From positions 1 to 64,000 of IMG/VR virus record IMGVR_UViG_3300038424_000251: a stretch of DNA of 64,000 nucleotides; one strand, 5' to 3'. Positions within the stretch are counted from its first letter, which is position 1, and every line of letters starts with the position of its first letter. Of the stretch, positions 2,013 to 29,086 are shown in pieces. The position numbers and the translations under genes were made by a program. The notes beneath the pieces are model-generated. The model searched no databases and was not told the origin of the DNA. It worked only from the letters and a program-made list of their open reading frames with translations.

Positions 2013-2537
2013 ATGGCACAGTCGGTTGTTAAAATTTCTCAATTACAAAGTATTTCTGGGTCTCTTGGTAATAATGATTTGGTTGAAGTTTCTCAAAATA
2101 TTGGGATAAATTTATATACAAGTTCAAAAGCTACAATGGCACAAGTAGCTGATTTCATTACAATTCCCGTTGGTGGTGTCATTGCTTGGATGTTATCGCT
2201 GGTAGGCACACCAGCATTGCCAAATAGATATGTACAGTGTAACGGACAAGTATTGACAGACCCTCAAAGTCCTTATAGTGGTTCGATAATTCCTAATCTT
2301 AACGGAACAAATAATAGAACTCAAAGATTTTTACGTGGTTCTACTACTTCAGGTGCTACAGGAGGAAGTGATACAAATATACATTCTCATAGTTCTACTT
2401 TAACTTCTGCATGTTTCTATGCAGGCAGTGGAACAATGTTTATAAATACTTGGGATTATAATGAACGTAGTGGTGATGAAACTATATCCGTTCTTCCGAG
2501 TTATTATGAGATTGTCTGGATAATGAGAATAAAATAA
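2013..2537 (+). CDS. Tail fibre/collar-domain protein (paralog of 2..487)
   Basis: N-terminal VKISQL...DLVEVSQ; C-terminal domain aligns with the first ORF (GTPALP, VQCNGQ, TDPQSPYSGS, TQRFLRGSTTSG, LPSYYE). ATG at 2013 preferred to TTG at 2007. Confidence 0.7.
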   Translation: MAQSVVKISQLQSISGSLGNNDLVEVSQNIGINLYTSSKATMAQVADFITIPVGGVIAWMLSLVGTPALPNRYVQCNGQVLTDPQSPYSGSIIPNLNGTNNRTQRFLRGSTTSGATGGSDTNIHSHSSTLTSACFYAGSGTMFINTWDYNERSGDETISVLPSYYEIVWIMRIK

Positions 2538-2540
2538 AAA

Positions 2541-3068
2541 TTATTTTCTTGGAGTAAAATTTACTGGGTCTAATAAAGGAGCTATTTCCTGTTCGCCACA
2601 GTCGGCCAAATATGATTTTACTTTTGGATTTTTTAATGCTTCACGGAATGATTGTTTCCATGTTATAGGAACGGGATTACCTGCTTCGTTGATATCTGGA
2701 TTATTATGAATTCTCTTTGCTTCTGACATCCAAGAACGAGTTACTTTATTAGTATGCTTGCGAATTCTCTCTCTATGTGATTCATTTGTATCATTAGGTT
2801 TTCGCAAACCGTTAGTTTTTATCTTAATCCAGATTTTATGTGGTTTTTCATCTTCATTGATATAAATAGAAGCACCTGAACGGTGTGTTTGCCAATCATT
2901 TCCTTCCATGTAACAGAACCAGTTTTTTCCTTCTACAATACCATCCCAATTTGGCGAACCGTCATTAAATCCTCCGGGCGTAGGGTATAGTTTAGGGTCA
3001 GGCGACCTATTAACGGCAGGAGCATGGCTAATCCATTCGATTATTTGAAGTAAAGTTTTTAGTTTCAT
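2541..3068 (-). CDS. Hypothetical protein with MKLKTLLQIIE leader
   Basis: Shared leader motif; TATTTATA 4 nt upstream of ATG on the minus strand. Confidence 0.6.
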   Translation of the reverse strand: MKLKTLLQIIEWISHAPAVNRSPDPKLYPTPGGFNDGSPNWDGIVEGKNWFCYMEGNDWQTHRSGASIYINEDEKPHKIWIKIKTNGLRKPNDTNESHRERIRKHTNKVTRSWMSEAKRIHNNPDINEAGNPVPITWKQSFREALKNPKVKSYLADCGEQEIAPLLDPVNFTPRK

Positions 3069-3087
3069 TGAATATAAATATGATGTA

Positions 3088-3981
3088 TTACTTGTAAGAT
3101 TCCCTTAATAAATTTAACTTTGAATCTCTTTGTGTGATTGTTATTCCCTGTTTCTTAAAAAAGTTTTCAACAGTATTCATATCATCTTCGGTAAGCATAC
3201 CTACATCCCAATATACCATACCTGTCTTTTTACCTTCTTCTGAAAAATGAAAACGAAAACGAACATTTGACCAATTGTGTGAAAATTCAGGTTCCCCACT
3301 ATGTTCTACACCATGATATCTTGATGATGGCAACCATTTATAGACAACTTCTCCATATTTACCTATCAAACCCAATCCCCATCGCCTTTCCTCTTTAGAT
3401 TCTTTTAAGTCATGATATTTAGCAATCCATTTTTTCCTTGTTTCAGACCTATCAGATGAGTACCGATTCATCATATCTTCTGCTTGTTTTCTACTAAATC
3501 CTAAATGACCGATGAGAAAATCTTTTAGTTCTGAGGTATAAGCTCTTATTTCTTCTGGGTCACCATAATATTTGTCACCCATCATTAGTGCATCATAAGT
3601 TATCTTATTGAATAGTTTTTTATGATAATTTATTGCATGAACTAATTCGTGATAAATAACACTGTCCACATATGCAGCATATTTACTTGAAGAATTATAG
3701 CGACCATGATAGACTCCCCCTATGGTTATAGTATCATCCTTAAAATTATATTCACCATATGGTAGAGTATCTTCTGAATAATATGTGTAACGAATTCTTA
3801 TGGATAGAATTTTATTTAGAAAGACATCAATTAAATCGTTCATAGAAAGACCAAACATTAAAAGTTGTTTAGAATCATATTCTTTTGGGAATGTTTTCTG
3901 CATATAAGTTCGCAAAGGTTCTCTAAATCTTTCCAAATCTCCAAAAAGATTTTCTAATAACAATATTTTTAATTTAATCAT
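3088..3981 (-). CDS. Leader + HExxH zincin-like domain + shared C-terminal domain
   Basis: MIKLKILLLE; YHELVHAINY with downstream YYGDPEEIRAY; the C-terminal module after DLKE resembles the ends of 5322..7064 and 27977..29086. Confidence 0.6.
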   Translation of the reverse strand: MIKLKILLLENLFGDLERFREPLRTYMQKTFPKEYDSKQLLMFGLSMNDLIDVFLNKILSIRIRYTYYSEDTLPYGEYNFKDDTITIGGVYHGRYNSSSKYAAYVDSVIYHELVHAINYHKKLFNKITYDALMMGDKYYGDPEEIRAYTSELKDFLIGHLGFSRKQAEDMMNRYSSDRSETRKKWIAKYHDLKESKEERRWGLGLIGKYGEVVYKWLPSSRYHGVEHSGEPEFSHNWSNVRFRFHFSEEGKKTGMVYWDVGMLTEDDMNTVENFFKKQGITITQRDSKLNLLRESYK

Positions 3982-4441
3982 TTATTTTAGGCTTCTGTGC
4001 ATTACAACAACCATACTCATTCACTTTTTCTTCAAGTTGAAATAGGTCTGGATTGGATTTATTCAGAGATTGAAATAACATACAAATTGATGTTTTTTGG
4101 TCAAAAGAACGACAATTTTCACATCTAACTTGACGATTTACCAACCCTGCTTCTTTTGGTGTATATGAGGCAACTTCCTTTCCTTTTAAATTTGGTGACG
4201 GTTTACCATAGACATAGAAATTACAACTCATTTCACAAGTTACTTTAATTTTTCCAAGAATGGAACATGTCAATCCATCTTCACCTGTCCACATTCTACA
4301 TGTAGCGCATTGAGCAAACTTTTCCTTTGGACCTTTTGGTTCTAAATATATAAAAACTTCTCTTGTAAGTTTGTTTTTTTGTTGTTTTACTTCGGAAAAT
4401 ACTTCCAATATCAACTTTTTTATATCATTTTTATTCATCAT
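3974..4441 (-). CDS. Cys-rich protein with two HiPIP-like CxxC...C...C units
   Basis: QCATCRMW..CSILG..SCNFY and RCENCRSF..CMLF..YGCCNA; leader IKKLILEVFSE. Confidence 0.45.
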   Translation of the reverse strand: MMNKNDIKKLILEVFSEVKQQKNKLTREVFIYLEPKGPKEKFAQCATCRMWTGEDGLTCSILGKIKVTCEMSCNFYVYGKPSPNLKGKEVASYTPKEAGLVNRQVRCENCRSFDQKTSICMLFQSLNKSNPDLFQLEEKVNEYGCCNAQKPKIND

Positions 4442-5310
4442 AATTGTACAAAGAAATAGTGAACATCTTCATCTAAATCATAGGCCCAAACTATAAAGTG
4501 TCTAGTATAAGGAGATATATTTCTAGCAAATTCAAATTGATGCCTATCTATTTTTTTTCTTAAAAAATCTGGAACATCGCATCTTGATAAAAATAAATGT
4601 TTATTAACTATTTGTTTTTGACTATTAGGAATATCTTTTGGATCACCAACAAGATGTTCCATTTCTGTGGCATCCGATGCTATATAGTTTCTAAATGATG
4701 GGTCATTAAGACCTGTTTTACAATTTCCTACATAACCATACCTTTTCCCACCTTCTGTTAATACAGTTTCATTATTTTCTAATCTAAAATAAGATTTACC
4801 GCCTTGTATTGGAGAGTAACAAATTTCTCTGATTGAAACTTTTAATTTCAATCCTTCTTTTATATGAGAAAATTTTCCTTTTTGGACATAAGCTAATGTT
4901 AAATGTGGGTTATATTCCGGGTAATCATTTTCATTCAGATAAATTCCTGAAAGTTCGTTTAATTTTTTTAAAACTGGACTGTTTACTTTAAACATTGCTA
5001 CATCATATTGGGGCGATGAAACAAATTTATCTAATCCTGTAAGTTCAACAACAAAAGGTTTTTGTCCTTTAAGAAGTTGACGAACTTCCAATTCATTTAA
5101 ATCCTTCAAAAATCCATAACGAATAGTGACATGACTTTCCGTTTCTCTGCCATATTCCCCGTTTTCTACATATAAATCATTGTTATTGATTAGTTGTTTA
5201 CTAAATTTTAAAATAGAATCAGATGATTCTTTTGGAATCATAGCCATCAAACAACCTTTTTTAGCCGTTGCGTCTCTATTTTCATTTACCATTTCTTTTA
5301 GATTTATCAT
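4438..5310 (-). CDS. 2H phosphoesterase (T4 gp57B/Acb1-like) plus C-terminal module
   Basis: Two HxT motifs, SHVTIRYG and YNPHLTLAYV; leader MINLKEMVNE; second module begins after VLTE. Confidence 0.75.
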   Translation of the reverse strand: MINLKEMVNENRDATAKKGCLMAMIPKESSDSILKFSKQLINNNDLYVENGEYGRETESHVTIRYGFLKDLNELEVRQLLKGQKPFVVELTGLDKFVSSPQYDVAMFKVNSPVLKKLNELSGIYLNENDYPEYNPHLTLAYVQKGKFSHIKEGLKLKVSIREICYSPIQGGKSYFRLENNETVLTEGGKRYGYVGNCKTGLNDPSFRNYIASDATEMEHLVGDPKDIPNSQKQIVNKHLFLSRCDVPDFLRKKIDRHQFEFARNISPYTRHFIVWAYDLDEDVHYFFVQL

Positions 5311-5321
5311 AATTTTTATTA

Positions 5322-7064
5322 TTATATATGTCTAACATACGTTTTATAATCATTAAGACCTATATGTTGAGGTTTATATATTCCTTTTTTTACTAACCAA
5401 TCTTCTGCTTTATGTCTATCTTCGTCAGTTGGTGGAAATTCATTCCACAAAATTGTATTTTTTGGGGTTTCTACAAAATATCTCCATCTTGTTCCTAATG
5501 ATGTGGAACCTATTCTCCCATGTGGTAATTCAGAATGATCTACTGCCATAACATCAGGAACCATTTCATCATAAGCTTCTATATTTCCATGATAAACTAC
5601 TCCTATGTAACCACGCCTTTTATTTATATCTTTTGCTTGTTCGTATGGACTCATTATTTCACTCATAGGCTTCTTAATATTACCAAAAATCAATTTATAT
5701 AATTCTTTAACATACTGAATAAATTTTGGTTTATCCAATTCGTAAATTCTTTTAAGTTTTTTTCGAGTATCGGAATGTGCCCAATATAACATAGCTACAC
5801 TATGAGGATGAATTGATTGATGGCCAGCAATATCATCTATCAAAGCTCTGAATCCTTCTTTTTTATTTGTAGGCCAAAATTTGCTAATTATAATTTCAAT
5901 ATTATTTTTATAATCATAAAGATTGGTTTTGAATTCTATATCTCTTAATTCATGTTCTATTCTATTAAATTTGTCTCCCGGTTCTTTAACAGTTCCAAAA
6001 ACATCTACACCTCTAATAGATGGATTTCTAAACCATCTTAATGATTTTTTGGATAATCCATATTTTTTAGGAAATTTTTTACGAAATTTTTTAAGAGTAT
6101 GTCCTAAAATATCTTGCAATAAATGTCTAACTTCATGTTTAACGTCGCGTAGTTTTCTTTCCATTGATGTGTTAAATTGTTCAATTAATTCTTCTACACA
6201 AAATGTTATATAAATAGCATTTTTTCCTGAGTCATAATAATCAGTACCTCCTAATGTTTTAGGGAGGGAATTATATTCTTCGTATGTTTCTACTGCTTTA
6301 AAATAAATCCAAAATGTTTTAAAATAACCTTCTCCTTCAATACTTGGTGTTCTGTAAAAGAACATATTTTGTTTAATTTTTATTGGAAATGCCATAATAA
6401 CCATCTCACCATTAGGAGATTTAAAAGGTTTAAGAGTTTCTCCTGATTTTATTTCTTGATATTTATTACCCACAATTTTATATGGATGGGCTAATGTTCC
6501 AAAAGACCTTGCCACATACGATTGAAGCATATCAGGAGATTTAGTTTGATACTTCTTTGATTTAAGGAAGGCTTCTATAATATAACCAGCAGCAGATTTG
6601 GTGATATCTATTACTTGTTTTTCAATTTCTAATGGAATCTCAAATGCTTCATTTAATTTTTTTATTTCAGGTCTTCTAAACATCGTAGGTCCAAAAAAAC
6701 TTGAAAGACTATAATCTTTTTTTCTTCCTCTATTATGTATGAATCCTAACGATTTATAAAATTTATCTAATTTCTTTTTGTACCGTTTTTCTGCTTCAGG
6801 AGAAAGAGTAATAATTAATCCGTGTTTATCAGCAAATGATTTAATGGCTTCTATAACTTTTCTTCCTATTCCTTGTTTACGAAACTCTTTCTTTATTTTT
6901 ATATCACGTAGATGAAATATATCTTGCCTGTAGCTTATATTAAAAAATAAACTTTCTAATTGAGGATACTGATGGATTAAGGACTGACGAAAATCTTCTG
7001 TCTCTTTATCAAGGTCAGTCTTATCTCCAAATCCTTCTATTATTAATGGTTTGAGTTTTATCAT
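5322..7064 (-). CDS. Multidomain: leader + GNAT + HExxH zincin-like + shared C-terminal domain
   Basis: MIKLKPLIIE; FRKQGIG...KFYKSLGF (GNAT motifs); KHEVRHLLQD; C-terminal VDHS..RWRY..NTILW. Confidence 0.65.
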   Translation of the reverse strand: MIKLKPLIIEGFGDKTDLDKETEDFRQSLIHQYPQLESLFFNISYRQDIFHLRDIKIKKEFRKQGIGRKVIEAIKSFADKHGLIITLSPEAEKRYKKKLDKFYKSLGFIHNRGRKKDYSLSSFFGPTMFRRPEIKKLNEAFEIPLEIEKQVIDITKSAAGYIIEAFLKSKKYQTKSPDMLQSYVARSFGTLAHPYKIVGNKYQEIKSGETLKPFKSPNGEMVIMAFPIKIKQNMFFYRTPSIEGEGYFKTFWIYFKAVETYEEYNSLPKTLGGTDYYDSGKNAIYITFCVEELIEQFNTSMERKLRDVKHEVRHLLQDILGHTLKKFRKKFPKKYGLSKKSLRWFRNPSIRGVDVFGTVKEPGDKFNRIEHELRDIEFKTNLYDYKNNIEIIISKFWPTNKKEGFRALIDDIAGHQSIHPHSVAMLYWAHSDTRKKLKRIYELDKPKFIQYVKELYKLIFGNIKKPMSEIMSPYEQAKDINKRRGYIGVVYHGNIEAYDEMVPDVMAVDHSELPHGRIGSTSLGTRWRYFVETPKNTILWNEFPPTDEDRHKAEDWLVKKGIYKPQHIGLNDYKTYVRHI

Positions 7065-7065
7065 A

Positions 7066-7668
7066 TTATTTTTGTTTCATTCTTTCAAACCAATCATCTC
7101 CATAAATCTTTGCTAGTTTATCATATATTTTTTTGGTAAGATGAATTCCTGCATCGGTCATCTGACCTAATTTGTCTTTTCCTTGCAAAATGCGTTGCCT
7201 TTGTTTTATATGAAAAACTCCTAAATCTGAACCTATTCCCAGTCTTTGATATGGTTTTTCTACCCATACACCCACTGCTCCAAATTCATTTGCAGCAAAC
7301 CCTACAGGTTTGTCTTCTATAAATGCTACTACCGTTTGATTCATAACAGGCAAATTTTCTTGTCTCATCTCATTATCCGACATATAAACAGGTTCATTAT
7401 TTTTATCACGTAATATGTCACCATTTTTATCAAATTTTACATATTTCACCTTTTCATTTCTTTGTCTATATTCTACAGTATAAGGACCATGTTGTTGACT
7501 AGCTATTAATTTAGGATATTCACTTTTATTGCCAAGCCAAGACAAACCACCTTCTGATTCATATCGGGTATATGCGTTAGAAGGAATGTGTCCTGTATAA
7601 TGATACTTAAGAAAATCTTCTTTATCAGACTCTATGATATTCTCAATAATGTCTCTTAATTTAATCAT
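7066..7668 (-). CDS. Leader + GNAT-like acetyltransferase
   Basis: MIKLRDIIENIIE; VWVEKPYQRLGIG and MTDAG. Confidence 0.6.
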   Translation of the reverse strand: MIKLRDIIENIIESDKEDFLKYHYTGHIPSNAYTRYESEGGLSWLGNKSEYPKLIASQQHGPYTVEYRQRNEKVKYVKFDKNGDILRDKNNEPVYMSDNEMRQENLPVMNQTVVAFIEDKPVGFAANEFGAVGVWVEKPYQRLGIGSDLGVFHIKQRQRILQGKDKLGQMTDAGIHLTKKIYDKLAKIYGDDWFERMKQK

Positions 7669-7994
7669 GGTTGTCGTAATGTTTTAATAAATGCTGCACC
7701 TTCTGGTGTAGTAATTCCCCATACAATTTTCCATCGAGGGTGTTCTCTATGTAAATCCCTAATCATTGCGGTTGCTATACCTTTTCTTCTTTCTGATTCA
7801 ACCGTTTCCATTCCGTCAATGTAAATTACATTTTCATATGTGGAATAATCAATTTTTCCAACTTTAATTCCCCTTTTGTCGTATGCAATAAGAGTGCAAT
7901 AATTCTGACCTTTATAATTATCTCTACAATCGTGTGTAAATTCTAAAGGCTCTCCTTTTACATATTCTGGTATAAGGTGTTTTAATTTTATCAT
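7665..7994 (-). CDS. Leader + GNAT acetyltransferase
   Basis: MIKLKHLIPE; ERRKGIATAMI and TPEGAAF. Confidence 0.7.
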   Translation of the reverse strand: MIKLKHLIPEYVKGEPLEFTHDCRDNYKGQNYCTLIAYDKRGIKVGKIDYSTYENVIYIDGMETVESERRKGIATAMIRDLHREHPRWKIVWGITTPEGAAFIKTLRQP

Positions 7995-9442
7995 ATTCCA
8001 GCCACTTTCTTAGCAATTGCTAATGCTTCATCTTTGGTCAATCCGGGATTACTATACCATGCATCAGCTACAGCATTTATAATTTCTTTGAATAATGGAC
8101 CCGGTTTCAAACCAAGGTCTTGTAAATCATATCCTGTTATAGGCATTTTTGGTTTAAGAGGGACGGTTTTTAATTTTTCCAATCTTTGTCTGATATTAGT
8201 AATTTGATTAGGCATTGACGATGCTTCAGAATGAGAAATATTATCTGCATGAATTAAATTTAATATATTTTCTAACTGTTCTCCTATTTCATTACGAAAT
8301 TTCAGTAGAGTTTTATCTTTGAATTTAACTCCAGCATCACCAGCTTGTTTTAATCTCATATGATTACGAACACCCAATTTAACTGCATCAATCAATTCTC
8401 TTGGATATTTTAATCTGTTCATTACATCTTCAACAATTTTTTCACCAGCTTCCTCATGTCCATAAAAATGAACACCTTTAGTCTCGGGGTCAACTGTTTT
8501 TGTGACAGTTTTTCCTATATCATGAAATAATGCCATTAACCGTTGAACTAGTATTGGTTCGGTTTTGCTTAATACATCAAGAGTATGTTGGAATACATCA
8601 TGTTTATGATGAATATTTTGAGCCATCTTTATTGCTGGTACTAATTCAGGAATTACAAATGGTAATAGTTCTGTAATTTTTAATAATTTAATTCCTTTGG
8701 ATGGAGAGCCAGTGATAAGAATTTTATTCAATTCGTCACGAATTCTTTCTTGGGAAATATTTTTAAGTTGAGAAGCATTTTTCTTTAAGCCTCTTATCAT
8801 AAATAAAGGAAGTGTCCAATCATATTTAACCGCAAAACGAACTGCTCTTAGCATACGGAGTGGGTCATCAGTAAAGATTTTATCGGGATTTAAAGGTGTT
8901 CTTATGATACCAGCTTTAATATCATCTTTGCCTTTACCTGTTAAATCAAGAATTTCTCCTGTGGATAAATCTTTTAATAAACTATTTACAGTAAAATCTC
9001 TTCTTTCAACATCATCTTTGAGTTCGCCGCCGGTAACTATTGGTTTTCTTGAACCCGGAATATATTTTTCTTTTCTTGGCATTACAGCTTCGATATCTAT
9101 ATCACTCAAATCTATACCATCATGAACAACACCACGAAGATTAAATTTAGCTGTTCCAAATCTTGGAAAAATTACAGGGTTTGAACTTGGGTCTTCTTCA
9201 GTTTCTCCACCTTTATAAGCTCCAACTTTTTTAGTAATCCATTTAGCAAATTCAATTCCACCATTTGGAGAATTAACAAGTAAATCCAAATCTTTCGGGT
9301 CTTTACCCATAAATTCATCGCGGACATATCCACCTGCTATGAATACTTTACCTTCCCATTCTGTTTCTTGGATGGTCTTTTTAATAAAGTCTTCTACAGC
9401 TTTTTCTTTTACACCTTCTAAAATAAGTTGTTTTATGCTCAT
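7991..9442 (-). CDS. cca: CCA-adding tRNA nucleotidyltransferase / poly(A) polymerase family with HD domain
   Basis: GGYVRD, DLD, RRDFTVN, DDPLRMLRAVRF, ERIRDEL, HDIGK. The start at 9442 gives the leader MSIKQLILE; the ORF track starts at 9478. Confidence 0.85.
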   Translation of the reverse strand: MSIKQLILEGVKEKAVEDFIKKTIQETEWEGKVFIAGGYVRDEFMGKDPKDLDLLVNSPNGGIEFAKWITKKVGAYKGGETEEDPSSNPVIFPRFGTAKFNLRGVVHDGIDLSDIDIEAVMPRKEKYIPGSRKPIVTGGELKDDVERRDFTVNSLLKDLSTGEILDLTGKGKDDIKAGIIRTPLNPDKIFTDDPLRMLRAVRFAVKYDWTLPLFMIRGLKKNASQLKNISQERIRDELNKILITGSPSKGIKLLKITELLPFVIPELVPAIKMAQNIHHKHDVFQHTLDVLSKTEPILVQRLMALFHDIGKTVTKTVDPETKGVHFYGHEEAGEKIVEDVMNRLKYPRELIDAVKLGVRNHMRLKQAGDAGVKFKDKTLLKFRNEIGEQLENILNLIHADNISHSEASSMPNQITNIRQRLEKLKTVPLKPKMPITGYDLQDLGLKPGPLFKEIINAVADAWYSNPGLTKDEALAIAKKVAGI

Positions 9443-9481
9443 TAAAATATAATTTTTTATTATACCATTATTTTTCATATT

Positions 9482-10033
9482 TTACAATAAAAATCTATTA
9501 AAGAACGCTTCATTTCTACCAGTCAATTTTTTTCCAGCAGAACTTCTAATATACTCTTTTTTTGCTGTATTCCAATTATTTCTCAATACTGCATCCGTAA
9601 ATTTTGGAAATTTTTCAAGACCGCCTAAACTGAAAGAAAAATCCATCAACATTTCCTCTTGTTTTTTGGATAACATAATATTTACATTATATGTTTTTTT
9701 GATATAATTGCGCATTCTTTGTTTTGCTATTTGTAAATCTTGAATAAGAATTTTTTCAGCAGTTTTTTGGTCTATACCATTTTTGAAATTGATAATTTCG
9801 TCATCTTCCAATTTATGACCATAAGCTATGTTCCATCCGGCTATATCTTTGTAAGGAAACCACAATTTTTTTTGCTTATCAAATCCAGCATATATTGAAT
9901 TTTCAACGGTTTTAATATATTTTATGAAATCGGGAGAAAATTCCTGATGCTGAATATGAATAGCAGGTGGTTGTGTTGCTGGTGACAAAGCTTCAATCAT
10001 AAATTCTTCAATAATTTCCCTTAGTTTAATCAT
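9482..10033 (-). CDS. Leader + phage lysozyme-like muramidase
   Basis: MIKLREIIEE; IKTVE...YKDIAGWNIAYGHKL...AEKILIQDL...LMDFSFSLG..L.KFPKF (GH24-like). Confidence 0.7.
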   Translation of the reverse strand: MIKLREIIEEFMIEALSPATQPPAIHIQHQEFSPDFIKYIKTVENSIYAGFDKQKKLWFPYKDIAGWNIAYGHKLEDDEIINFKNGIDQKTAEKILIQDLQIAKQRMRNYIKKTYNVNIMLSKKQEEMLMDFSFSLGGLEKFPKFTDAVLRNNWNTAKKEYIRSSAGKKLTGRNEAFFNRFLL

Positions 10034-10083
10034 ATCTATAAATAGGTGTGACTTTAGATGAAATATTCATATTTATAAGAGAT

Positions 10084-11295
10084 ATGAACGATGTACTACA
10101 ACCTTTAACGAATCCAACAACATTAGTTGACCAAGACCGAGTAAGATGGCCGGGAAGTGGCTCATCGGTTGTTGGAAGAACTCCATTTGGTTTTTACGAC
10201 AGTGATACTTCATTTCAAGTTGATGCACCATCAGCTGCTGTATGGGCAGCTTACCGTCTTGGTTATCCCATCGTTGATATTGAAATGCTTGATGTAAATT
10301 TTTATGCGGCTTTTGAAGAAGCTGTTAACGAATATTCTGCTCAGGTAAATCAATGGAATATACGCAACTATATGCAGGTATTTCAAGGACAAAAAGTTAC
10401 TGATTTGGGTAATCTTACAGGAAGAGCAGTTACAGGAACACCGTTACCTTACATAATTGAGCTTTCTAAAGAATATGGAAGAGAAGTTGGTGTTGGTGGT
10501 TATGCTGATTGGAAGAAGGGGTTTATTGTTACAAAACCTATGAAGCAGGTTTATGATTTACAAGAATTGTGGGGAGATAAAGTTGAAGATTGTAATAGAA
10601 TTGAAGTTATGAGAGTTTTTCATGATTTTCCACCGGCTTTTGCTCGTATTTATGACCCATTCTCTATGACGGGAATGAGTTATTCTAATGTATTAAATGA
10701 ATTGGGGTTTGGTGCATACTCTCCAGCAGTTCAGTTCTTGATGACTCCAATTTTTGAAGATTTACTTCGTGGTCAGGCTATTCAGTTTAATGATATGGTT
10801 CGTAAATCTGCTTTTTCTTTCGAGTTAACAAATAATAAACTGAGATTGTTTCCTATTCCAACATATGGATTTAAAGTATATTTTCATTATATGGTTCGCA
10901 ATGATAGATTAAAGGGAGAATTTGCTAACGCTCCAAATTATACAGGTAGTTATGTTGCAGATTATGCTAACATTCCTTATAATAATATAACATATAATAC
11001 AATTAATTCTGTTGGGAGACAGTGGGTTCGTAAGTATTTTCTGGCTCTTTGCAAGGAGCTACTTGGATGTATTCGTCAAAAATATCAAACACTTCCTATT
11101 CCGGGTGGTGATGTTACTTTGGATGGTGCAGAGTTGCGTAATGAAGCTCAACAAGAGAAAACAGACTTGATAACACAACTAAGAGAGTCTCTTGATGCAG
11201 CAAGTCAAAAATCACAAACTGAAAATCAAGCTTTGCAAGCTGAACAAATGCAAGAAACTCTAAAACGAGTTCCATTATTCATTTACATTGGATAA
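10084..11295 (+). CDS. Neck protein (T4 gp13-like)
   Basis: RLGYPIVDIE, EEAVNEYS, WVRKYFLALCKELLG..R.KY..PGGDVTLDG; true ATG placed after TATTTATA. Confidence 0.7.
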   Translation: MNDVLQPLTNPTTLVDQDRVRWPGSGSSVVGRTPFGFYDSDTSFQVDAPSAAVWAAYRLGYPIVDIEMLDVNFYAAFEEAVNEYSAQVNQWNIRNYMQVFQGQKVTDLGNLTGRAVTGTPLPYIIELSKEYGREVGVGGYADWKKGFIVTKPMKQVYDLQELWGDKVEDCNRIEVMRVFHDFPPAFARIYDPFSMTGMSYSNVLNELGFGAYSPAVQFLMTPIFEDLLRGQAIQFNDMVRKSAFSFELTNNKLRLFPIPTYGFKVYFHYMVRNDRLKGEFANAPNYTGSYVADYANIPYNNITYNTINSVGRQWVRKYFLALCKELLGCIRQKYQTLPIPGGDVTLDGAELRNEAQQEKTDLITQLRESLDAASQKSQTENQALQAEQMQETLKRVPLFIYIG

Positions 11296-12465: not shown

Positions 12466-12804
12466 ATGATTAAGTTAAAACAATTAGTAAAAGAGATAAT
12501 AGACCGACTTGTATGGAAAATTCCAGAAAATGCGCCTGTGCCAGTAGTAGATGTATTACATAAACTTGTAAAAGTATCCTTTTCCAGACATAAATCTCAC
12601 ATTGAAAAGTATATTAGGTTAGACAACCCAAAAGGTGGTTCTGAATGGATTATTACTAATCCAAACAATCCAAAAGTCACTTTAGCTTATGATACAGATA
12701 CTAATAAGTGGTGGGCTATGGCTGACCATCCTTCTTTTGGACCAAGTATAGGAATAATAAAAGATATTCAACATTTATTTCAAATAATAGATAACTGGGT
12801 GTAA
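12466..12804 (+). CDS. Hypothetical protein with MIKLKQLVKE leader
   Basis: Shared leader motif. Confidence 0.6.
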   Translation: MIKLKQLVKEIIDRLVWKIPENAPVPVVDVLHKLVKVSFSRHKSHIEKYIRLDNPKGGSEWIITNPNNPKVTLAYDTDTNKWWAMADHPSFGPSIGIIKDIQHLFQIIDNWV

Positions 12805-12806
12805 TA

Positions 12807-13199
12807 ATGATTAAATTGAAACAACTACTTTATGAAGCAATTGATGAAAATGATCTTATTGTGGTTTCAACCCCAACTAATGTTTCTATATCATATCGTA
12901 TTAGTCTTATGAAAGGTGCTACAGCTAGTATAGATAGAATAGATAATAATGAATGGTGGGTATCAAGAGTATTGGTTAGTGATGAATCTTCAAGAAGACA
13001 AGGAATTGGTTCAATTCTATTGACAAGAGCTGTTCAGGAAGTGTTAAAGCATGAACCTAATGCTAAAATAATTGTTGCACCGGGTGGATATGAAAGTAAA
13101 ACAAGACAACAAACTAGATTTTATAAGAAAAATGGGTTTATTCCAGTAAAAGGGCAACTCGGAGTTTTAATGTATAACAATCCAAATATAAGTAAATAA
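12807..13199 (+). CDS. Leader + GNAT acetyltransferase
   Basis: MIKLKQLLYE; VSRVLV...RRQGIGSILL...RFYKKNGF. Confidence 0.75.
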   Translation: MIKLKQLLYEAIDENDLIVVSTPTNVSISYRISLMKGATASIDRIDNNEWWVSRVLVSDESSRRQGIGSILLTRAVQEVLKHEPNAKIIVAPGGYESKTRQQTRFYKKNGFIPVKGQLGVLMYNNPNISK

Positions 13200-23639: not shown

Positions 23640-23972
23640 ATGATTAAGTTAAAAGACATGATACCTAAAAAGTATTTTTATCATATTACACCAAGGAAAA
23701 ATATTCCAAATATGAAAATACATGGTATAGTTCCCAAACCAGATAATCCTGCTCCTTTTTGTGATAAAGTAGTTTGTTTATTTGATAATAGGACATCAAT
23801 AGAAACTGCATTTACGAGTTGGTTGTTAGGTAAATTTAATAAAAATGAGCCAATGGTTCTTTTAACTATAGACCCTACGGGGTTAGACATACATTCATCT
23901 GAAATAGCATATGAATTTAGAGTTTTTAAACCCATACCTTGGAAAAATGTTGTAAAAGTTGAAAATATATGA
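23640..23972 (+). CDS. Leader + ADP-ribosyltransferase-like fold
   Basis: MIKLKDMIP; FYHITPRKNI.NM..HGI.P, VCLF, LLTID, YEFRV..PIP pattern of small ART/Tpt1-like domains. Confidence 0.55.
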   Translation: MIKLKDMIPKKYFYHITPRKNIPNMKIHGIVPKPDNPAPFCDKVVCLFDNRTSIETAFTSWLLGKFNKNEPMVLLTIDPTGLDIHSSEIAYEFRVFKPIPWKNVVKVENI

Positions 23973-24880
23973 TTAAACTAAAAAACATTTTAACTGAAGT
24001 AGCTGCAGATAGGTCATGGAATTCTCAATTATGGAACTCTGATTTATGGCAATCAAATTTATGGAACTCTGATATATGGAAATCTCATATATGGAACACA
24101 GATTTGTGGAAATCTGATTTATGGAAGTCTGATATATGGAATCCTAGTTCAACTACTACTGCTGCTACATCAAAAGAACTGACTGAAATTGAACAACATA
24201 AACCTAATGAAGTAGAAGCTTTGCCGGGTATTTTTGTGGACCCTTCAATTATAAAACATATTCAAATATTAAATAAACTTGGATTTCACACAGTTTTTTC
24301 TTGTTCTGGAATTTCATATGACCATCCCAATTTGAAGGCTGGTTCTCGTAGTGGTTATGTAATGTTTAGACATGGTTTAACTCCTAATCAAATAACGAGA
24401 ATATACAAAGCTACACTTGGTATAAAGGGGGTAAATTATGATCCGATTCATCTTAGGTCAGTTCCTTATGTTAGTTTTAGGGGTAGTGATTCTGAAAGAT
24501 TGAATGGTTGGAACCAATTTGTGAAGAATTTAATGAAGCGTAGAGTATATTATAAAAAATTAGGTAAAATCAAGGAATCAGAAGAAAAACATTCACGTAA
24601 AGGGAAATGTTATGAGCTTACCGGTAGATATGTTTCTACTCACCCCGATTCCATTCTTGTTCATGGTAAATTAGTAAATCCGTTTGTGAAAGGATTACCA
24701 GAAATAGAGCATGCATGGGTGGAAATTGGTGATAAAATTTTTGACCCCATAATGGATATAACTTGGCCAAAACAAGCATATGAGTCTTTATTTCATGCTA
24801 AACCATATAAAAAATATACTCAGGAGGAAGTTCTTAAAATTACTCTTAGAACAGAGCATTGGGGGCCTTGGGATGTATGA
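23969..24880 (+). CDS. Multidomain: leader + W-pentapeptide repeat + SCSG domain + Cys-His-Asp (transglutaminase-like) domain
   Basis: MIKLKNILTE; (LWxSD) repeats; VDPSI..IQILNKLGFHTVFSCSG; GKCYE...HAWVE...IFDP. Confidence 0.55.
   Translation: MIKLKNILTEVAADRSWNSQLWNSDLWQSNLWNSDIWKSHIWNTDLWKSDLWKSDIWNPSSTTTAATSKELTEIEQHKPNEVEALPGIFVDPSIIKHIQILNKLGFHTVFSCSGISYDHPNLKAGSRSGYVMFRHGLTPNQITRIYKATLGIKGVNYDPIHLRSVPYVSFRGSDSERLNGWNQFVKNLMKRRVYYKKLGKIKESEEKHSRKGKCYELTGRYVSTHPDSILVHGKLVNPFVKGLPEIEHAWVEIGDKIFDPIMDITWPKQAYESLFHAKPYKKYTQEEVLKITLRTEHWGPWDV
24014..24142 (+). repeat. In-frame 15-bp tandem repeat (~9 units, consensus ttatggaa(c/a)tctgat)
   Basis: Directly visible; encodes SWNSQ-LWNSD-LWQSN-LWNSD-IWKSH-IWNTD-LWKSD-LWKSD-IWN. 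Confidence 0.9.
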
Positions 24881-26857: not shown

Positions 26858-27976
26858 ATGAAAATATCCAAAATTAAAGAAATAATTGATGAAGTTATAT
26901 CTGAAGAAATGGGGGAGGGATTTGGTTATGTCTATGCGAAAGACAGAGCTAAAGACCCAAAATCCATTCCCGGAGAACACTGGCGAATTAAATTTCAAAG
27001 CGCTCACGATTTAAAGAAACATGGTAATACGGAAAAATCAAAAGTGTCAGAAATTATCTATGAAATTCCTCGAAAGATTGGAATAAATGCAATGGGTGAC
27101 GAAATAGGTAGAACTTCCACTGACGAAGGAGAACTCAGGAATATGATTGGTAATATGAAACCCGGCCAATCTATTCTTTTTCATGGTAAAGAAGGTATAA
27201 AAGGACCTTTAATTTATATTGTTAAACGTGAGGGTATTGGATATGAAGTTGAGAATCATAGAAAACAAAAGCAAGAAATCACCAATGCTGACCAACTCGA
27301 TTTAATTATCAGTGGTATTGCAAAACAAGCAAACATTTTATTTAGATTTTGGAAACAAAATAAACCATCCACATATTCAGCTCCGAAATTACCAGTTGTA
27401 TCTAAAGAACAAATTAGGGAAATAATTAAAGAATTGATTGATGAAATGTGGATTGCATGGGAAGAAGATAAAAATGACAACAAAGATATAACAGAAAGTA
27501 AATATATGAATAATAAAAAAGAATTCTTAAGAGATATAATTCGTGAAGCTATTCAAGAAGTAGAATTTGAAGATGCTCCTGATGAAAAATATCAAGAAGA
27601 ACAAGAAATACTGTCTATGAAGAGAATACAATCATATGCTCATTGGATAAAAGAAAATCTTAAAGATGCTGCTAGTGAAATTGGTGGAGTAATTCAGAAA
27701 ATAGTAACCGAAATTGATGGTCTTGTTTCGGCTCATGAAAAAGGGAAGGAAATTTCACCAGTCAATGTTCACGAAGTAGCTCCTCCGGGGTGGGAAGGAA
27801 CAGTAAAAGCTATGAAGAAACATTCTGTTGGTGGGGCTAAAAGGTGGGCTCCAAAAAAGAAAAAAGAAGAAACCGTGGATGTGGAAGAAGCCAAAAAGAA
27901 GAAAAAGATTACTAATCCATATAAATTAGCATGGTGGATGAAAGGTAAAGGTTATAAATCACATAAACAAGATTAA
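26858..27976 (+). CDS. Modular protein with three KEIIxE-type motifs (putative internal head polyprotein)
   Basis: MKISKIKEIIDEVISE, IREIIKELIDE, LRDIIREAIQE; C-terminal VAPPGWEGTVKAMKKH...NPYKLAWWMK. Confidence 0.55.
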   Translation: MKISKIKEIIDEVISEEMGEGFGYVYAKDRAKDPKSIPGEHWRIKFQSAHDLKKHGNTEKSKVSEIIYEIPRKIGINAMGDEIGRTSTDEGELRNMIGNMKPGQSILFHGKEGIKGPLIYIVKREGIGYEVENHRKQKQEITNADQLDLIISGIAKQANILFRFWKQNKPSTYSAPKLPVVSKEQIREIIKELIDEMWIAWEEDKNDNKDITESKYMNNKKEFLRDIIREAIQEVEFEDAPDEKYQEEQEILSMKRIQSYAHWIKENLKDAASEIGGVIQKIVTEIDGLVSAHEKGKEISPVNVHEVAPPGWEGTVKAMKKHSVGGAKRWAPKKKKEETVDVEEAKKKKKITNPYKLAWWMKGKGYKSHKQD

Positions 27977-29086
27977 GTGAAATTTCGTGTTTACAATAAA
28001 ATATTGGACCCGAACTTATGGAAAGGCAAAAAGCTTAAACCTGAAGTTAGAGAATCACTGTTGAAAGTTGCCGAAGATTTTTATAACTCCACAGATTTAA
28101 AAGGTGAAATTCATAACATATTGTTATTAGGTTCATCAGCTAATTATAATTGGACCCCCGTAAGTGATATAGATGTGCACGTTGTCATAGATATTGCTGA
28201 AGAAAAAATCAACGAAGAATATGCTCGGAAATTCATGGATGGATTAGCATTCAAGTGGAATACCGAACATGATATTGAAGTAAAAGGTCATCCTGTTGAA
28301 ATGTATATTCAGGACATAAGAGAACCAAACAGTTCTCCACAACAAGCAAGACCGGGAGCTTCAATTTATTCATTATATGATGGTAAATGGTTGTTAGAGC
28401 CAAATCCACAAAATATCAAATTGGATTCTGATAAAATTCGTAAGAAATTTCAACTTATAAATAAGAAAATTGAAACTCTAATTCAAACTGAAAATATTGA
28501 ACAATTAAAATCGTTGATGAAATCTATAAGAAATTATCGTAATGCTGGATTAGCAAAAAGTGGAGAATTCAGTGTTGAAAATATTGTATTTAAAGCTCTA
28601 CGACATAGTGGCGACCTTAAAAAAATGAAGGATACCATCAATACTATATATGATAGAAAAACAAGTTTACCTGAAATGGGCAATATTATCCCCAACAAGA
28701 AAACACCATCAAACAATTTAAACGAACAAAAAATAGATAAACCATTTATTGTTGTTGGTGTAGCTTTTGGGGATTTAAGTGTGAAAAGTGATATAAGTTA
28801 TGAGGTTGGGTCTGTATCTCACCCTGATATAGATGATGAACGGGGTGATATCAAATGGAGATATAAATCAAATACTAACACAATATATTGGTCAACTTAT
28901 AGATTAGAACCGACAAGGGACCAAAGAGCAGAAGTTATAGCTCATCTTCGTAATAAATACAATGTGATTAATCCAAAGGAAACAATTGACCCCGACAAGT
29001 ATTTTTTTGATGCTCATACTATAGATGAATGGATTGATTCTTTTTCGTTTGATTCTTTTCTGTTAAAAAAGTGTGAAAAATCATAA
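27977..29086 (+). CDS. Pol-beta-superfamily nucleotidyltransferase + shared C-terminal domain
   Basis: LLGSSANYNWTPVSDIDVHVV, VEMYIQD, GEFSVENIVFKALR; appended module after NLNE. Confidence 0.7.
   Translation: MKFRVYNKILDPNLWKGKKLKPEVRESLLKVAEDFYNSTDLKGEIHNILLLGSSANYNWTPVSDIDVHVVIDIAEEKINEEYARKFMDGLAFKWNTEHDIEVKGHPVEMYIQDIREPNSSPQQARPGASIYSLYDGKWLLEPNPQNIKLDSDKIRKKFQLINKKIETLIQTENIEQLKSLMKSIRNYRNAGLAKSGEFSVENIVFKALRHSGDLKKMKDTINTIYDRKTSLPEMGNIIPNKKTPSNNLNEQKIDKPFIVVGVAFGDLSVKSDISYEVGSVSHPDIDDERGDIKWRYKSNTNTIYWSTYRLEPTRDQRAEVIAHLRNKYNVINPKETIDPDKYFFDAHTIDEWIDSFSFDSFLLKKCEKS

What the first reader, a model, noticed from the sequence alone, without database searches (positions are those of the whole stretch)
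4438..5310. Acb1-like 2H phosphoesterase carrying the leader tag
The two HxT motifs and their spacing fit the 2H family, to which T4 gp57B/Acb1 belongs; Acb1 degrades CBASS cyclic oligonucleotides. The leader suggests pre-made delivery from the virion rather than early expression. It also has an extra C-terminal module of unknown function.
Basis: partly seen in the sequence, partly recalled or inferred. Interest (0 to 1): 0.65.

Follow-up and report, generated by a model that had tools for sequence, protein, structure and literature searches.

The report
Leader-tagged Acb1-like phage phosphodiesterase
A 365-kb T4-related jumbo phage encodes an enzyme related to the anti-CBASS nuclease Acb1 that carries a short N-terminal tag looking like T4's capsid-targeting signal, so the phage may pack this counter-defence enzyme into its head and inject it with its DNA.

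Summary
ORF 4438-5310 (minus strand, 290 aa) has three parts. Residues 1-10 are a leader. Residues 17-179 are a 2H phosphoesterase core with HVT at 60-62 and HLT at 136-138. Residues 188-290 are an extra domain.

Predicted structure shows a 2H fold but cannot separate Acb1 from LigT/ThpR (Z 13.0 against 13.3-14.4). Sequence profiles can. The family profile hits only Acb1-type chains in the PDB. It aligns to T4-type Acb1 at 94.5% probability (E 8e-8) and to E. coli ThpR at 3%. Two Acb1 stacking residues are kept. The Tyr12 equivalent is Leu.

The leader fits T4's capsid-targeting sequence: hydrophobic residues at 4 and 7, an aliphatic residue at 8, Glu at 10. It heads at least nine unrelated ORFs clustered by the head genes. 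It is conserved as peptide, not as DNA. The genome encodes a gp21-type prohead protease.

The C-terminal module belongs to an uncharacterised phage domain family with no solved fold match. It is fused to 2H cores in several arrangements.

Best reading: a head-packaged, injected Acb1-like phosphodiesterase. Substrate and packaging are inferred, not shown. I class it as a new variant of a known kind.

The parts
4438..5310 (-). Whole ORF, 290 aa plus stop: leader, 2H phosphoesterase core and C-terminal domain
   Evidence: 73 homologues
5281..5310 (-). Leader, residues 1-10 (MINLKEMVNE). It resembles the T4 capsid-targeting sequence: Leu4, Met7, Val8, Glu10. The predicted prohead-protease cut is after Glu10.
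   Evidence: Disordered in the model (pLDDT 33). Family consensus MINLKxMLxE, with Glu10 kept in at least 90%. Shared with unrelated ORFs. Synonymous codons vary.
4774..5262 (-). 2H phosphoesterase core, residues 17-179
   Evidence: pLDDT above 90. 2H fold at Z 13-14. Profile alignment to T4-type Acb1 at 94.5% probability over 128 columns.
5125..5133 (-). First catalytic motif, His60-Val-Thr62, equivalent to T4 Acb1 H44/T46
4897..4905 (-). Second catalytic motif, His136-Leu-Thr138, inside the Acb1-like signature DYPEYNPHLTLAY; equivalent to T4 Acb1 H113/T115
4780..4815 (-). Conserved tail of the core, residues 166-177 (SPIQGGKSYFRL). Possible counterpart of Acb1's C-terminal lid, with Tyr174 at the distance of Acb1 Trp147. 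This is inference.
   Evidence: K172 is invariant; S166, P167, I168, G170 and S173 are nearly invariant. Short family members end just after it.
4750..4773 (-). Low-confidence linker, residues 180-187
   Evidence: pLDDT below 50
4441..4749 (-). C-terminal domain, residues 188-290. Member of an uncharacterised phage domain family with signature GxCxxGLxD ... DATE ... W.YD ... D.HYFF. Cys197, Asp282 and Phe286 are invariant.
   Evidence: Folds alone at pLDDT 89. No PDB match (best Z 3.8). Atlas TM at most 0.51. 35 remote relatives. Alignment A5.
2541..10033 (-). Context: a tightly packed minus-strand run of leader-tagged ORFs (lysozyme, CCA-adding enzyme, three GNAT proteins, the 2H enzyme and three unknowns) that runs divergently from the gp13-like neck gene

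Best explanation
The gene encodes a three-part protein.

(1) Residues 1-10 form a propeptide. It works like the T4 capsid-targeting sequence: it brings the protein into the scaffolding core of the prohead, and the phage's gp21-family prohead protease removes it after Glu10.

(2) Residues 17-179 are a metal-independent 2H phosphodiesterase of a Bacteroidota-phage subfamily. Its nearest characterised relatives are Acb1 and PDE-9. His60/Thr62 and His136/Thr138 would cleave 3'-5' bonds of cyclic oligonucleotide immune signals through a 2',3'-cyclic phosphate intermediate. That would silence CBASS-type (possibly also type III CRISPR-type) signalling.

(3) Residues 188-290 are an accessory domain of unknown activity, tethered right after the lid-like tail of the core. 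It recurs with 2H cores, so it probably modulates substrate access or binds a ligand or partner.

The mature protein would ride in the head and enter the next cell with the DNA, so the enzyme is present from time zero. It would also be present in the producing cell late in infection, when the prohead protease itself can trigger CBASS.

Shown here: the ORF, the motifs, the fold, the kinship to Acb1, the shared leader, and the presence of the protease and T4-type head genes. Inferred: cleavage, packaging, ejection, substrate, and the role of the C-domain.
For: Enzyme. The fold is 2H with both HxT motifs conserved. The family profile searched against all PDB sequences hits only Acb1-type chains: 9q2g at 7.5e-5, 9q2y at 4.9e-4 and 7t26 at 1.9e-3. 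No LigT, ThpR, CPDase, AKAP18 or Usb1 chain appears. hhalign of the family against T4 Acb1 gives 73.6% probability (E 2.9e-5). Against a 5-member T4-type Acb1 alignment it gives 94.5% (E 7.9e-8, 128 columns). Against E. coli ThpR it gives 3.1%. The shared signature is DYP.Y.PH.TL.Y, ending in Tyr where ThpR has Arg. Acb1 W74 and F107 map to conserved F96 and Y130. PDE-9 and T4 Acb1 degrade CBASS signals (bioRxiv 10.1101/2025.08.21.671373; PMC9117128).

Leader. It stands on 9 of 474 ORFs against about 0.7 expected, all beside the head module. Conservation is at the peptide level: synonymous codons vary and the upstream DNA is unrelated. It matches the T4 IPIII capsid-targeting logic, where residues 4 and 7 target and residues 8 and 10 are processed (PMC9026906; PMC9958956). 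The genome has a gp21-type protease (E 1.7e-27), a gp20 portal, a gp23 capsid protein and a gp17 terminase. The capsid protein has QLIEE|ATATG at residue 61, where T4 gp23 is cut after 65 residues. Other cargo with the tag includes a lysozyme. Leaders persist inside fusion proteins, as a cleavage site would. Homologues in other phages lack the leader, so it is a modular add-on.

Genome. This is the only 2H gene, and the three Rnl2-type RNA ligase genes lie 120-210 kb away.
Against: No biochemical or proteomic data exist for this uncultured phage or any close relative. Structure ranks LigT/ThpR-type chains level with or slightly above Acb1. The Acb1 Pfam score is at or just under the threshold, and the generic 2_5_RNA_ligase2 model scores as well. 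Acb1 Tyr12 is Leu21 here, and Glu141 and the lid Trp147 have no secure equivalent. Some viral 2H groups cleaved none of 18 tested messengers (bioRxiv 10.1101/2025.08.21.671373). A CCA-adding/HD enzyme sits in the same operon in three related phage lineages, which also fits an RNA-end role. Val at P3 of the leader is less canonical than Leu or Ile. The host and its defence systems are unknown.
Confidence: 0.45

Rival explanations
1. It is an RNA-end healing enzyme of the ThpR/LigT kind. It would open 2',3'-cyclic phosphate ends on damaged tRNA or other RNA, working with the co-operonic CCA-adding/HD enzyme. Both would be delivered from the capsid to counter host tRNA-cleaving defences.
For: The best structural matches are ThpR/LigT-type chains: 1iuh Z 14.4, 5h7e Z 14.2, E. 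coli LigT Z 13.3. A CCA-adding enzyme with an HD domain lies three genes upstream and keeps this linkage in L003 and in the P0018 contigs. Databases name the relatives '2'-5' RNA ligase'.
Against: Sequence profiles do not see ThpR/LigT. No such chain appears in the PDB profile search. hhalign gives 3.1%. TIGR02258 scores 18.9 bits against a cut-off of 65.7. The residue after the second motif is the Acb1-type Tyr, not the ThpR-type Arg. The phage's RNA ligase genes are far away and untagged. The Z differences are within the tie range of 1. The linkage to the CCA enzyme may only reflect a shared cargo cassette.
Confidence: 0.2
2. It is a signal-degrading 2H phosphodiesterase, but its substrate is not a canonical Acb1 substrate. 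Candidates are c-di-GMP used by STING-type CBASS of Bacteroidota, 2'-5' linked oligonucleotides, or a messenger not yet described.
For: The adenine-reading Glu141 and the stacking Tyr12 of Acb1 are not conserved. Viral 2H groups differ sharply in substrate, and two groups had no substrate in an 18-compound panel (bioRxiv 10.1101/2025.08.21.671373). The nearest viral structures are unlabelled proteins of Maribacter and Tenacibaculum phages, not labelled Acb1 entries. The capsid protein is closest to Flavobacterium phages.
Against: The nearest characterised relatives (Acb1, PDE-9) are broad CBASS-signal degraders. The host is not known. The point about STING-type CBASS in Bacteroidota rests on my own knowledge and was not tested here.
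Confidence: 0.15
3. The leader is not a packaging signal. It could be a shared amphipathic N-terminal helix with another role, such as assembly into a cytoplasmic complex, membrane or compartment targeting, control of stability, or, in this family, a lid over the active site like the N-terminal lid of PDE-9. The enzyme would then act only in the cell where it is made.
For: No proteomic evidence exists. The fold test of leader against protease gave no answer. PDE-9 uses its first 15 residues as a lid (bioRxiv 10.1101/2025.08.21.671373), and the structural alignment places residues 1-13 of this protein at that position. The 2H family has its own leader variant, MINL with [DN]R after Glu10.
Against: The same leader heads a lysozyme, GNATs, a CCA enzyme and unknown proteins, so it cannot be a 2H-specific lid. 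Its length and its positions 4, 7, 8 and 10 match the mapped T4 capsid-targeting sequence (PMC9026906). The tagged genes cluster by the head module of a phage with a gp21 protease. Leaders are retained at domain junctions in fusions.
Confidence: 0.2

Closest known systems
T4 Acb1 (gp57B) and Erwinia phage FBB1 Acb1 (PDB 7T26/7T27)
   Same: 2H fold with an HxT/HxT tetrad. Profile homology at 94.5% probability over 128 columns. Shared DYP.Y.PH.TL.Y signature. Aromatic residues are kept at the W74 and F107 positions. The tail after the last aligned column is the same length (18 residues), with an aromatic residue at the Trp147 distance. In T4, acb1 also lies directly beside an internal-protein gene, ipI.
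   Different: About 17% identity. The core is roughly 25 residues longer. Tyr12 is Leu. Glu141 and the lid cannot be aligned. It has an N-terminal leader and a 100-aa C-terminal domain. The Pfam score is borderline. The nearest viral structures are a separate Bacteroidota-phage group.
2H PDE-9 of Burkholderia phage BCSR5 (PDB 9Q2G/9Q2Y)
   Same: It is the best sequence hit among solved structures (E 7.5e-5, 21% identity, Z 11.6). It has a functional N-terminal extension before strand 1.
   Different: The PDE-9 N-terminus is a catalytic lid. Here the N-terminus is a tag shared with unrelated proteins and probably removed. PDE-9 has no extra C-terminal domain.
ThpR/LigT RNA 2',3'-cyclic phosphodiesterases (E. 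coli 5LDI, T. thermophilus 1IUH)
   Same: Same fold at Z 13.3-14.4, and a similar core length.
   Different: No detectable profile similarity. Tyr stands in place of the Arg after the second HxT.
T4 internal proteins IPI-III and Alt, with their capsid-targeting sequence
   Same: A propeptide of about 10 residues with hydrophobic residues at 4 and 7, an aliphatic residue at 8 and Glu at 10. A gp21-type protease. A variable set of non-essential enzymes and anti-defence cargo. IPI blocks GmrSD and Alt modifies RNA polymerase (PMC9958956, PMC9026906).
   Different: The leader sequence differs (MIKLK.LI.E against MKTYQEFIAE). The cargo set is far larger and more enzymatic. No 2H enzyme is known as T4 head cargo.
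ICP3 Gp15, an ejectosome protein that inhibits the CBASS effector CapV (bioRxiv 10.1101/2025.07.23.666291)
   Same: A virion-delivered protein acting against CBASS.
   Different: It is a structural ejection protein that blocks the effector stoichiometrically. It is not a signal-degrading enzyme with a targeting tag.

Membership tests
2H phosphoesterase superfamily | Two H-x-T/S motifs | tested here: met
   H60-V-T62 and H136-L-T138. All four residues are at least 90% conserved in 70 relatives.
2H phosphoesterase superfamily | 2H fold | tested here: met
   AlphaFold core pLDDT above 90. 83 chains at Z of 8 or more, and every entry listed at that level is a 2H-superfamily protein.
Acb1 (Pfam PF23474, T4 gp57B type) | Score above the Pfam gathering threshold | tested here: inconclusive
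   25.3 bits against 27 on the protein and 27.1 in the six-frame scan. 64 of 70 relatives match at E below 0.01, but 67 also match the generic PF13563.
Acb1 (Pfam PF23474, T4 gp57B type) | Profile-level homology to bona fide Acb1, better than to other 2H families | tested here: met
   hhalign gives 94.5% (E 7.9e-8) against a T4-type Acb1 alignment and 3.1% against ThpR. The PDB profile search returns only Acb1-type chains.
Acb1 (Pfam PF23474, T4 gp57B type) | Base-stacking aromatics Y12, W74, F107 (PMC9117128) | tested here: inconclusive
   W74 maps to F96 and F107 to Y130, both conserved. Y12 maps to Leu21, which is nearly invariant, so that feature is not met.
Acb1 (Pfam PF23474, T4 gp57B type) | C-terminal lid with W147 and adenine-reading E141 | tested here: inconclusive
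   The profile alignment stops at residue 161. The remaining 18 residues equal Acb1's in number and put Tyr174 opposite Trp147, but this is an ungapped guess. There is no Glu at the E141 position. Here the tail is followed by an extra domain.
Acb1 (Pfam PF23474, T4 gp57B type) | Cleaves CBASS cyclic oligonucleotides and rescues phage from CBASS | not testable with these tools
   Needs enzyme assays and infection assays.
ThpR/LigT RNA 2',3'-cyclic phosphodiesterase | Match to the family models (TIGR02258, PF02834) | tested here: not met
   TIGR02258 scores 18.9 bits against a cut-off of 65.7. PF02834 scores 18.6 against 23.3. No ThpR/LigT chain appears in the PDB profile search.
ThpR/LigT RNA 2',3'-cyclic phosphodiesterase | H-x-T-L-x-R second motif (Arg five residues after His in E. 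coli ThpR) | tested here: not met
   This protein has HLTLAY, with Tyr141 invariant. T4 Acb1 has HITLSY. ThpR has HITLLR.
T4-type capsid-targeting sequence / gp21 propeptide | N-terminal tag of about 10 residues: targeting residues 4 and 7, processing residues 8 and 10, with Glu at 10 (PMC9026906) | tested here: met
   Leu4, Met7, Val8, Glu10. The family consensus is L4, M7, L8, E10.
T4-type capsid-targeting sequence / gp21 propeptide | The phage has a gp21-family prohead protease and T4-type head genes | tested here: met
   PF03420 E 1.7e-27 at contig 342792-343421. Gp20 portal, Gp23 capsid protein and gp17-type terminase are present.
T4-type capsid-targeting sequence / gp21 propeptide | The tag is shared by several unrelated, dispensable cargo proteins | tested here: met
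   9 exact and about 10 looser cases, including a lysozyme, GNATs and a CCA enzyme. The same holds in the related locus L003.
T4-type capsid-targeting sequence / gp21 propeptide | Cleavage after the tag, and presence of the mature protein in virions | not testable with these tools
   The phage is uncultured. The fold test of protease plus leader gave no answer.

The most novel reading that the evidence does not exclude
The MIKLK-type leader is a general capsid-loading address in a clade of uncultured far-T4 jumbo phages. With it the phage pre-loads its head with a whole kit of enzymes: an Acb1-like phosphodiesterase, a CCA-adding tRNA repair enzyme, several acetyltransferases, a lysozyme and unknown modules. 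Domains are shuffled and fused at leader boundaries and released by the prohead protease. Within this kit, the 2H core and its recurrent DATE/HYFF partner domain form a two-part eraser of nucleotide immune signals that is already in place when the DNA arrives.
Probability: 0.3. Interest if true: 0.8.

Novelty: new variant of a known kind. Interest (0 to 1): 0.6.

Why it matters
Known Acb1-type enzymes are made after infection starts. A version carrying a capsid address would be the first case of a signal-degrading anti-CBASS enzyme delivered ready-made. It would extend the T4 idea of injected internal proteins to a large, modular enzyme arsenal in jumbo phages of environmental bacteria. It also gives a simple sequence rule (a ten-residue tag plus a gp21 protease) for predicting virion cargo in metagenomic phages. 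It flags an uncharacterised partner domain that travels with 2H phosphodiesterases. Finally, because the prohead protease itself can switch on CBASS late in infection, an enzyme made together with the head genes is well timed in the producing cell too.

Tried and rejected
1. Structure as a discriminator. Foldseek and VIA-align against the PDB give a tie between LigT/ThpR-type chains and Acb1.

2. Pfam as a discriminator. Acb1 and the generic 2_5_RNA_ligase2 model score alike, both on the protein and across 70 relatives.

3. Complex prediction of the prohead protease with residues 1-40. The result was no answer (score 0.00, controls not run). This is not evidence either way.

4. C-terminal domain. 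Nothing was found in Pfam or PHROGs, among PDB representatives (best Z 3.8), in the ESM Atlas by shape (TM at most 0.51) or in BFVD (no E below 0.001). There is no paralogue in the genome. The Atlas feature search for residues 180-290 returned 2H/Acb1 clusters at about 0.91, with few shared features. I discounted this as a weak result, possibly carried over from the rest of the protein.

5. DNA-level explanation of the leader (a conserved start region, promoter or recombination box). Rejected, because synonymous codons vary and the upstream DNA is not conserved.

6. The promoter and terminator scan of the cassette found no more than the shuffles did.

7. A nucleotide search of the region 26858-29086 against known phages found nothing.

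8. The Doherty et al. supplements hold no entry for the Maribacter relatives, so the structural group could not be assigned.

9. The sequencing-read tools were not used.
Full report
**What is there.** The window is the first 64 kb of a single 365,299-bp IMG/VR virus contig with 33% G+C. The contig is a myovirus with T4-type core genes: tail sheath, gp13-like neck protein, gp17-type terminase, gp20 portal, gp21 prohead protease and gp23 capsid protein. The capsid protein is nearest to an uncultured 484-kb phage and to Flavobacterium, Microcystis and Rhodothermus phages. It is therefore a distant T4 relative, probably of a Bacteroidota-like host. The host is not known.

The reported ORF is exactly as described: 4438-5310 on the minus strand, 290 aa. 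It has His60-Val-Thr62 and His136-Leu-Thr138. It sits in a tightly packed minus-strand run of ORFs from 10033 down to 2541, with 4-base overlaps and no terminator on that strand.

**The enzyme core.**
- Family scans give 2_5_RNA_ligase2 at 26.6 bits, Acb1 at 25.3 bits (both cut-offs 27) and phrog_755 at E 3.9e-10. The six-frame scan gives Acb1 27.1 bits.
- 73 homologues were found, all metagenomic. In a 70-sequence alignment H60, T62, H136 and T138 are conserved in at least 90% of sequences, and Y141 and K172 are invariant.
- AlphaFold with this alignment gives pLDDT above 90 for residues 17-179, a disordered leader (pLDDT 33) and a separate C-terminal domain.
- Against the PDB the core is a clear 2H fold, but the ranking does not discriminate. 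ThpR/LigT-type chains give Z 13.3-14.4. Acb1 of phage FBB1 gives Z 13.0 with 135 of 137 residues aligned at 3.0 A. PDE-9 gives Z 11.6 with the highest identity, 21%.

**Sequence profiles do discriminate.**
- A profile of the family searched against every PDB sequence returns only Acb1-type proteins: 9q2g at 7.5e-5, 9q2y at 4.9e-4 and 7t26 at 1.9e-3. None of the LigT, ThpR, CPDase, AKAP18, Usb1, CNPase or eukaryotic viral PDE chains appear.
- I took T4 gene 57B (acb1) and E. coli thpR from annotated records.
- hhalign of the family gives 73.6% probability (E 2.9e-5) against T4 Acb1.
- It gives 3.1% against ThpR.
- It gives 94.5% (E 7.9e-8, 128 columns, residues 17-161 against Acb1 8-134) against an alignment of five diverse T4-type Acb1 proteins.
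- TIGR02258 (ThpR) scores 18.9 bits against a cut-off of 65.7.

The shared signature is DYP.Y.PH.TL.Y. The final Tyr is invariant in both families, where ThpR has Arg.

The ligand-contact residues described for Acb1 (PMC9117128) map as follows:
- W74 maps to the conserved Phe96.
- F107 maps to the conserved Tyr130.
- Y12 maps to a nearly invariant Leu21.
- E141 and the lid Trp147 fall beyond the aligned region.

The 18 residues left after the aligned block equal Acb1's in number, and an ungapped match puts Tyr174 opposite Trp147. The segment SPIQGGKSYF is very conserved, and short family members end just after it. I take that as a possible lid, by inference only.

In BFVD the nearest viral models are unlabelled '2'-5' RNA ligase' proteins of Maribacter and Tenacibaculum phages. 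Entries labelled Acb1 come lower.

My reading is that this is a separate subfamily whose nearest characterised relatives are Acb1 and PDE-9. That group degrades CBASS signals broadly (bioRxiv 10.1101/2025.08.21.671373). The same study found viral 2H groups with no activity on 18 messengers, so the substrate stays an inference.

**The leader.** Many ORFs near the start of the window begin with MIKLK.LI.E or a close variant.
- With exact spacing (Met1, hydrophobic 4 and 7, Leu/Ile/Val 8, Glu10), 9 of 474 ORFs carry it at their true N-terminus. The internal rate is 0.16%, so about 0.7 are expected. All nine lie between 359 kb and 25 kb, flanking the head module at 334-356 kb across the contig end.
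- Looser variants add about ten more, including proteins inside the head module.
- Synonymous codons vary freely and the upstream DNA is unrelated, so the conservation is in the peptide.
- The pattern is the one mapped for the T4 IPIII capsid-targeting sequence. There the first ten residues suffice, residues 4 and 7 target, and residues 8 and 10 are needed for processing by gp21 (PMC9026906; PMC9958956).
- The target has Leu4, Met7, Val8 and Glu10. Its orthologues have the consensus MINLKxMLxE, with Glu10 kept in at least 90%.
- The capsid protein has QLIEE|ATATG at residue 61, close to where T4 gp23 loses its 65-residue propeptide. The scaffold-like protein begins MINSELLKE.

Tagged proteins include:
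- a lysozyme;
- a CCA-adding enzyme with an HD domain, tagged at Met13;
- four GNAT-type proteins;
- a treble-clef-like protein, a protein with an HExxH-like motif, and several unknown proteins.

A related contig, L003, shows the same tags on its lysozyme, on its 2H enzyme and on other proteins.

Leaders survive inside fusion proteins: before the 2H core in P0023 and P0028, and before the CCA domain in L003. This is what a protease site at a domain junction would look like.

The 2H homologues of a 484-kb uncultured phage and of Maribacter phage Molly lack the leader. In the former, neighbouring genes have a similar one. The tag is therefore a modular addition.

A fold test of protease plus leader gave no answer. 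Packaging and cleavage remain inferences.

**The C-terminal module.** Residues 188-290 fold alone with pLDDT 89 and pTM 0.82. They have no match in Pfam, PHROGs, the PDB (best Z 3.8), the ESM Atlas or BFVD. There is no paralogue in the genome.

The word-based searches found the module only on close orthologues. The exhaustive search found 35 remote representatives:
- Many are stand-alone proteins of 85-120 aa.
- Several start with a leader of this type (for example MKLIDLLKE) or with another recurrent start, MNWYK.
- Some are fused to other domains.
- One, P0095, is an independent fusion of a 2H core and this module at 33% identity.

Within the family, P0053 and P0062 carry the module after a coiled-coil linker. 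Cys197, Asp282 and Phe286 are invariant, and the signature is GxCxxGLxD, DATE, W.YD, D.HYFF. The repeated pairing with 2H cores suggests a functional link. The activity is unknown.

**Rivals.**
- RNA-end repair. The main rival is an RNA-end repair role together with the CCA-adding enzyme. That enzyme stays in the same operon in three lineages. Against it stand the profile results, the Tyr-for-Arg difference, and the fact that the three Rnl2-type ligase genes lie far away and untagged.
- Non-canonical messenger. The loss of Tyr12 and of a Glu141 equivalent leaves base preference open. c-di-GMP of STING-type CBASS in Bacteroidota is one candidate, from my own knowledge and untested.
- Leader with another role. 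The leader could serve another purpose or act as an N-terminal lid as in PDE-9. Its presence on unrelated proteins argues against a lid.

**Timing.** Hobbs and Kranzusch report that prohead proteases activate CBASS late in infection (PMC12991175). An Acb1-like enzyme made with the head genes would then be useful twice: in the producing cell, and after ejection into the next cell.

**Known or new.** T4 packs and injects anti-defence and takeover proteins by such a tag (IPI, Alt). A structural ejection protein that blocks a CBASS effector has been described (bioRxiv 10.1101/2025.07.23.666291). I found no report of a tagged or packaged Acb1-type enzyme, nor of the leader strings. In phage G the Acb1 homologue was not in the proteome. 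I class the finding as a new variant of a known kind.

**Confidence.**

| Claim | Confidence |
|---|---|
| 2H phosphoesterase | about 0.97 |
| Kinship to the Acb1 group | about 0.8 |
| Leader is a head-targeting propeptide | about 0.7 |
| Substrate is a cyclic oligonucleotide signal | about 0.5 |
| Whole story | 0.45 |

Noticed in passing
window 2541-10033 (-), 12466-13199 (+), 23640-24880 (+): A cassette of leader-tagged ORFs: lysozyme 9482-10033; CCA-adding/HD enzyme 7991-9478 (tag at Met13); GNAT proteins 7665-7994, 7066-7668, 5322-7064 and 12807-13199; treble-clef-like 3974-4441; a protein with a HELVH motif at 3088-3981; unknowns 2541-3068, 12466-12804 and 23640-23972.
   Followed up: partly
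window 23969-24880 (+): A leader-tagged 303-aa protein whose N-terminal part is a run of Trp-containing short repeats (SWNSQLWNSDLW...). It has no family match.
   Followed up: no
L003:3520-5538 and proteins P0023, P0028: Leaders are retained inside fusion proteins. MNEIKQLIVE stands at residue 129, just before the CCA-adding domain. MINLRDTLME and VINLSNLLTE stand just before the 2H core, after an HExxH-type module. This suggests polyprotein-like cargo released by the prohead protease.
   Followed up: partly
protein P0034 versus window 2541-3068 (-): In another phage the 2H core is fused, through a coiled-coil linker, to a module homologous to the neighbouring ORF 2541-3068. Cargo modules are shuffled among tagged genes.
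   Followed up: no
proteins P0093, P0095, P0102-P0104, P0107, P0110: A second recurrent N-terminal start (MNWYK, MSWYK or MNWLK, often followed by A-x-E) heads many proteins that carry the DATE/HYFF domain. It may be the equivalent address tag of another phage lineage. A-x-E would fit phiKZ-type protease sites, a point from my own knowledge.
   Followed up: no
L004 (T4 NC_000866) 7592-8411: In T4, acb1 (57B) lies directly next to ipI. Its first residues (MMEFKDFST) resemble the start of the IPI propeptide (MKTFKEFTST), though without a following cleavage motif. This could be chance or a relic.
   Followed up: no
L013 (LR756508) 2178-11224: The 484-kb uncultured phage has a paralogous family of proteins of about 250-285 aa. 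Each starts with a similar leader (MKLKRVLQSLLSE, MRLKKILKE, MKLKNLLSE). They lie beside a leaderless 2H homologue and the DNA polymerase gene.
   Followed up: no
BFVD hits: 2H domains also occur inside very large actinophage proteins named 'capsid morphogenesis protein' (Microbacterium phage OneinaGillian, 1050 aa) and 'putative structural protein' (Gordonia phage GMA2, 883 aa). This hints at a second, independent route for carrying 2H enzymes in virions.
   Followed up: no
contig 354066-355913 and 352431-354023 (outside the window; L011, L010): The gp23-like capsid protein has QLIEE|ATATG at residue 61, a likely maturation site. The acidic scaffold-like protein starts MINSELLKE, which resembles the leader.
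   Followed up: partly
contig 126528-127007, 189025-189528, 212753-213343 (outside the window; L007-L009): Three Rnl2-type RNA ligase genes (PF09414) lie elsewhere in the genome. None is near the 2H gene.
   Followed up: no
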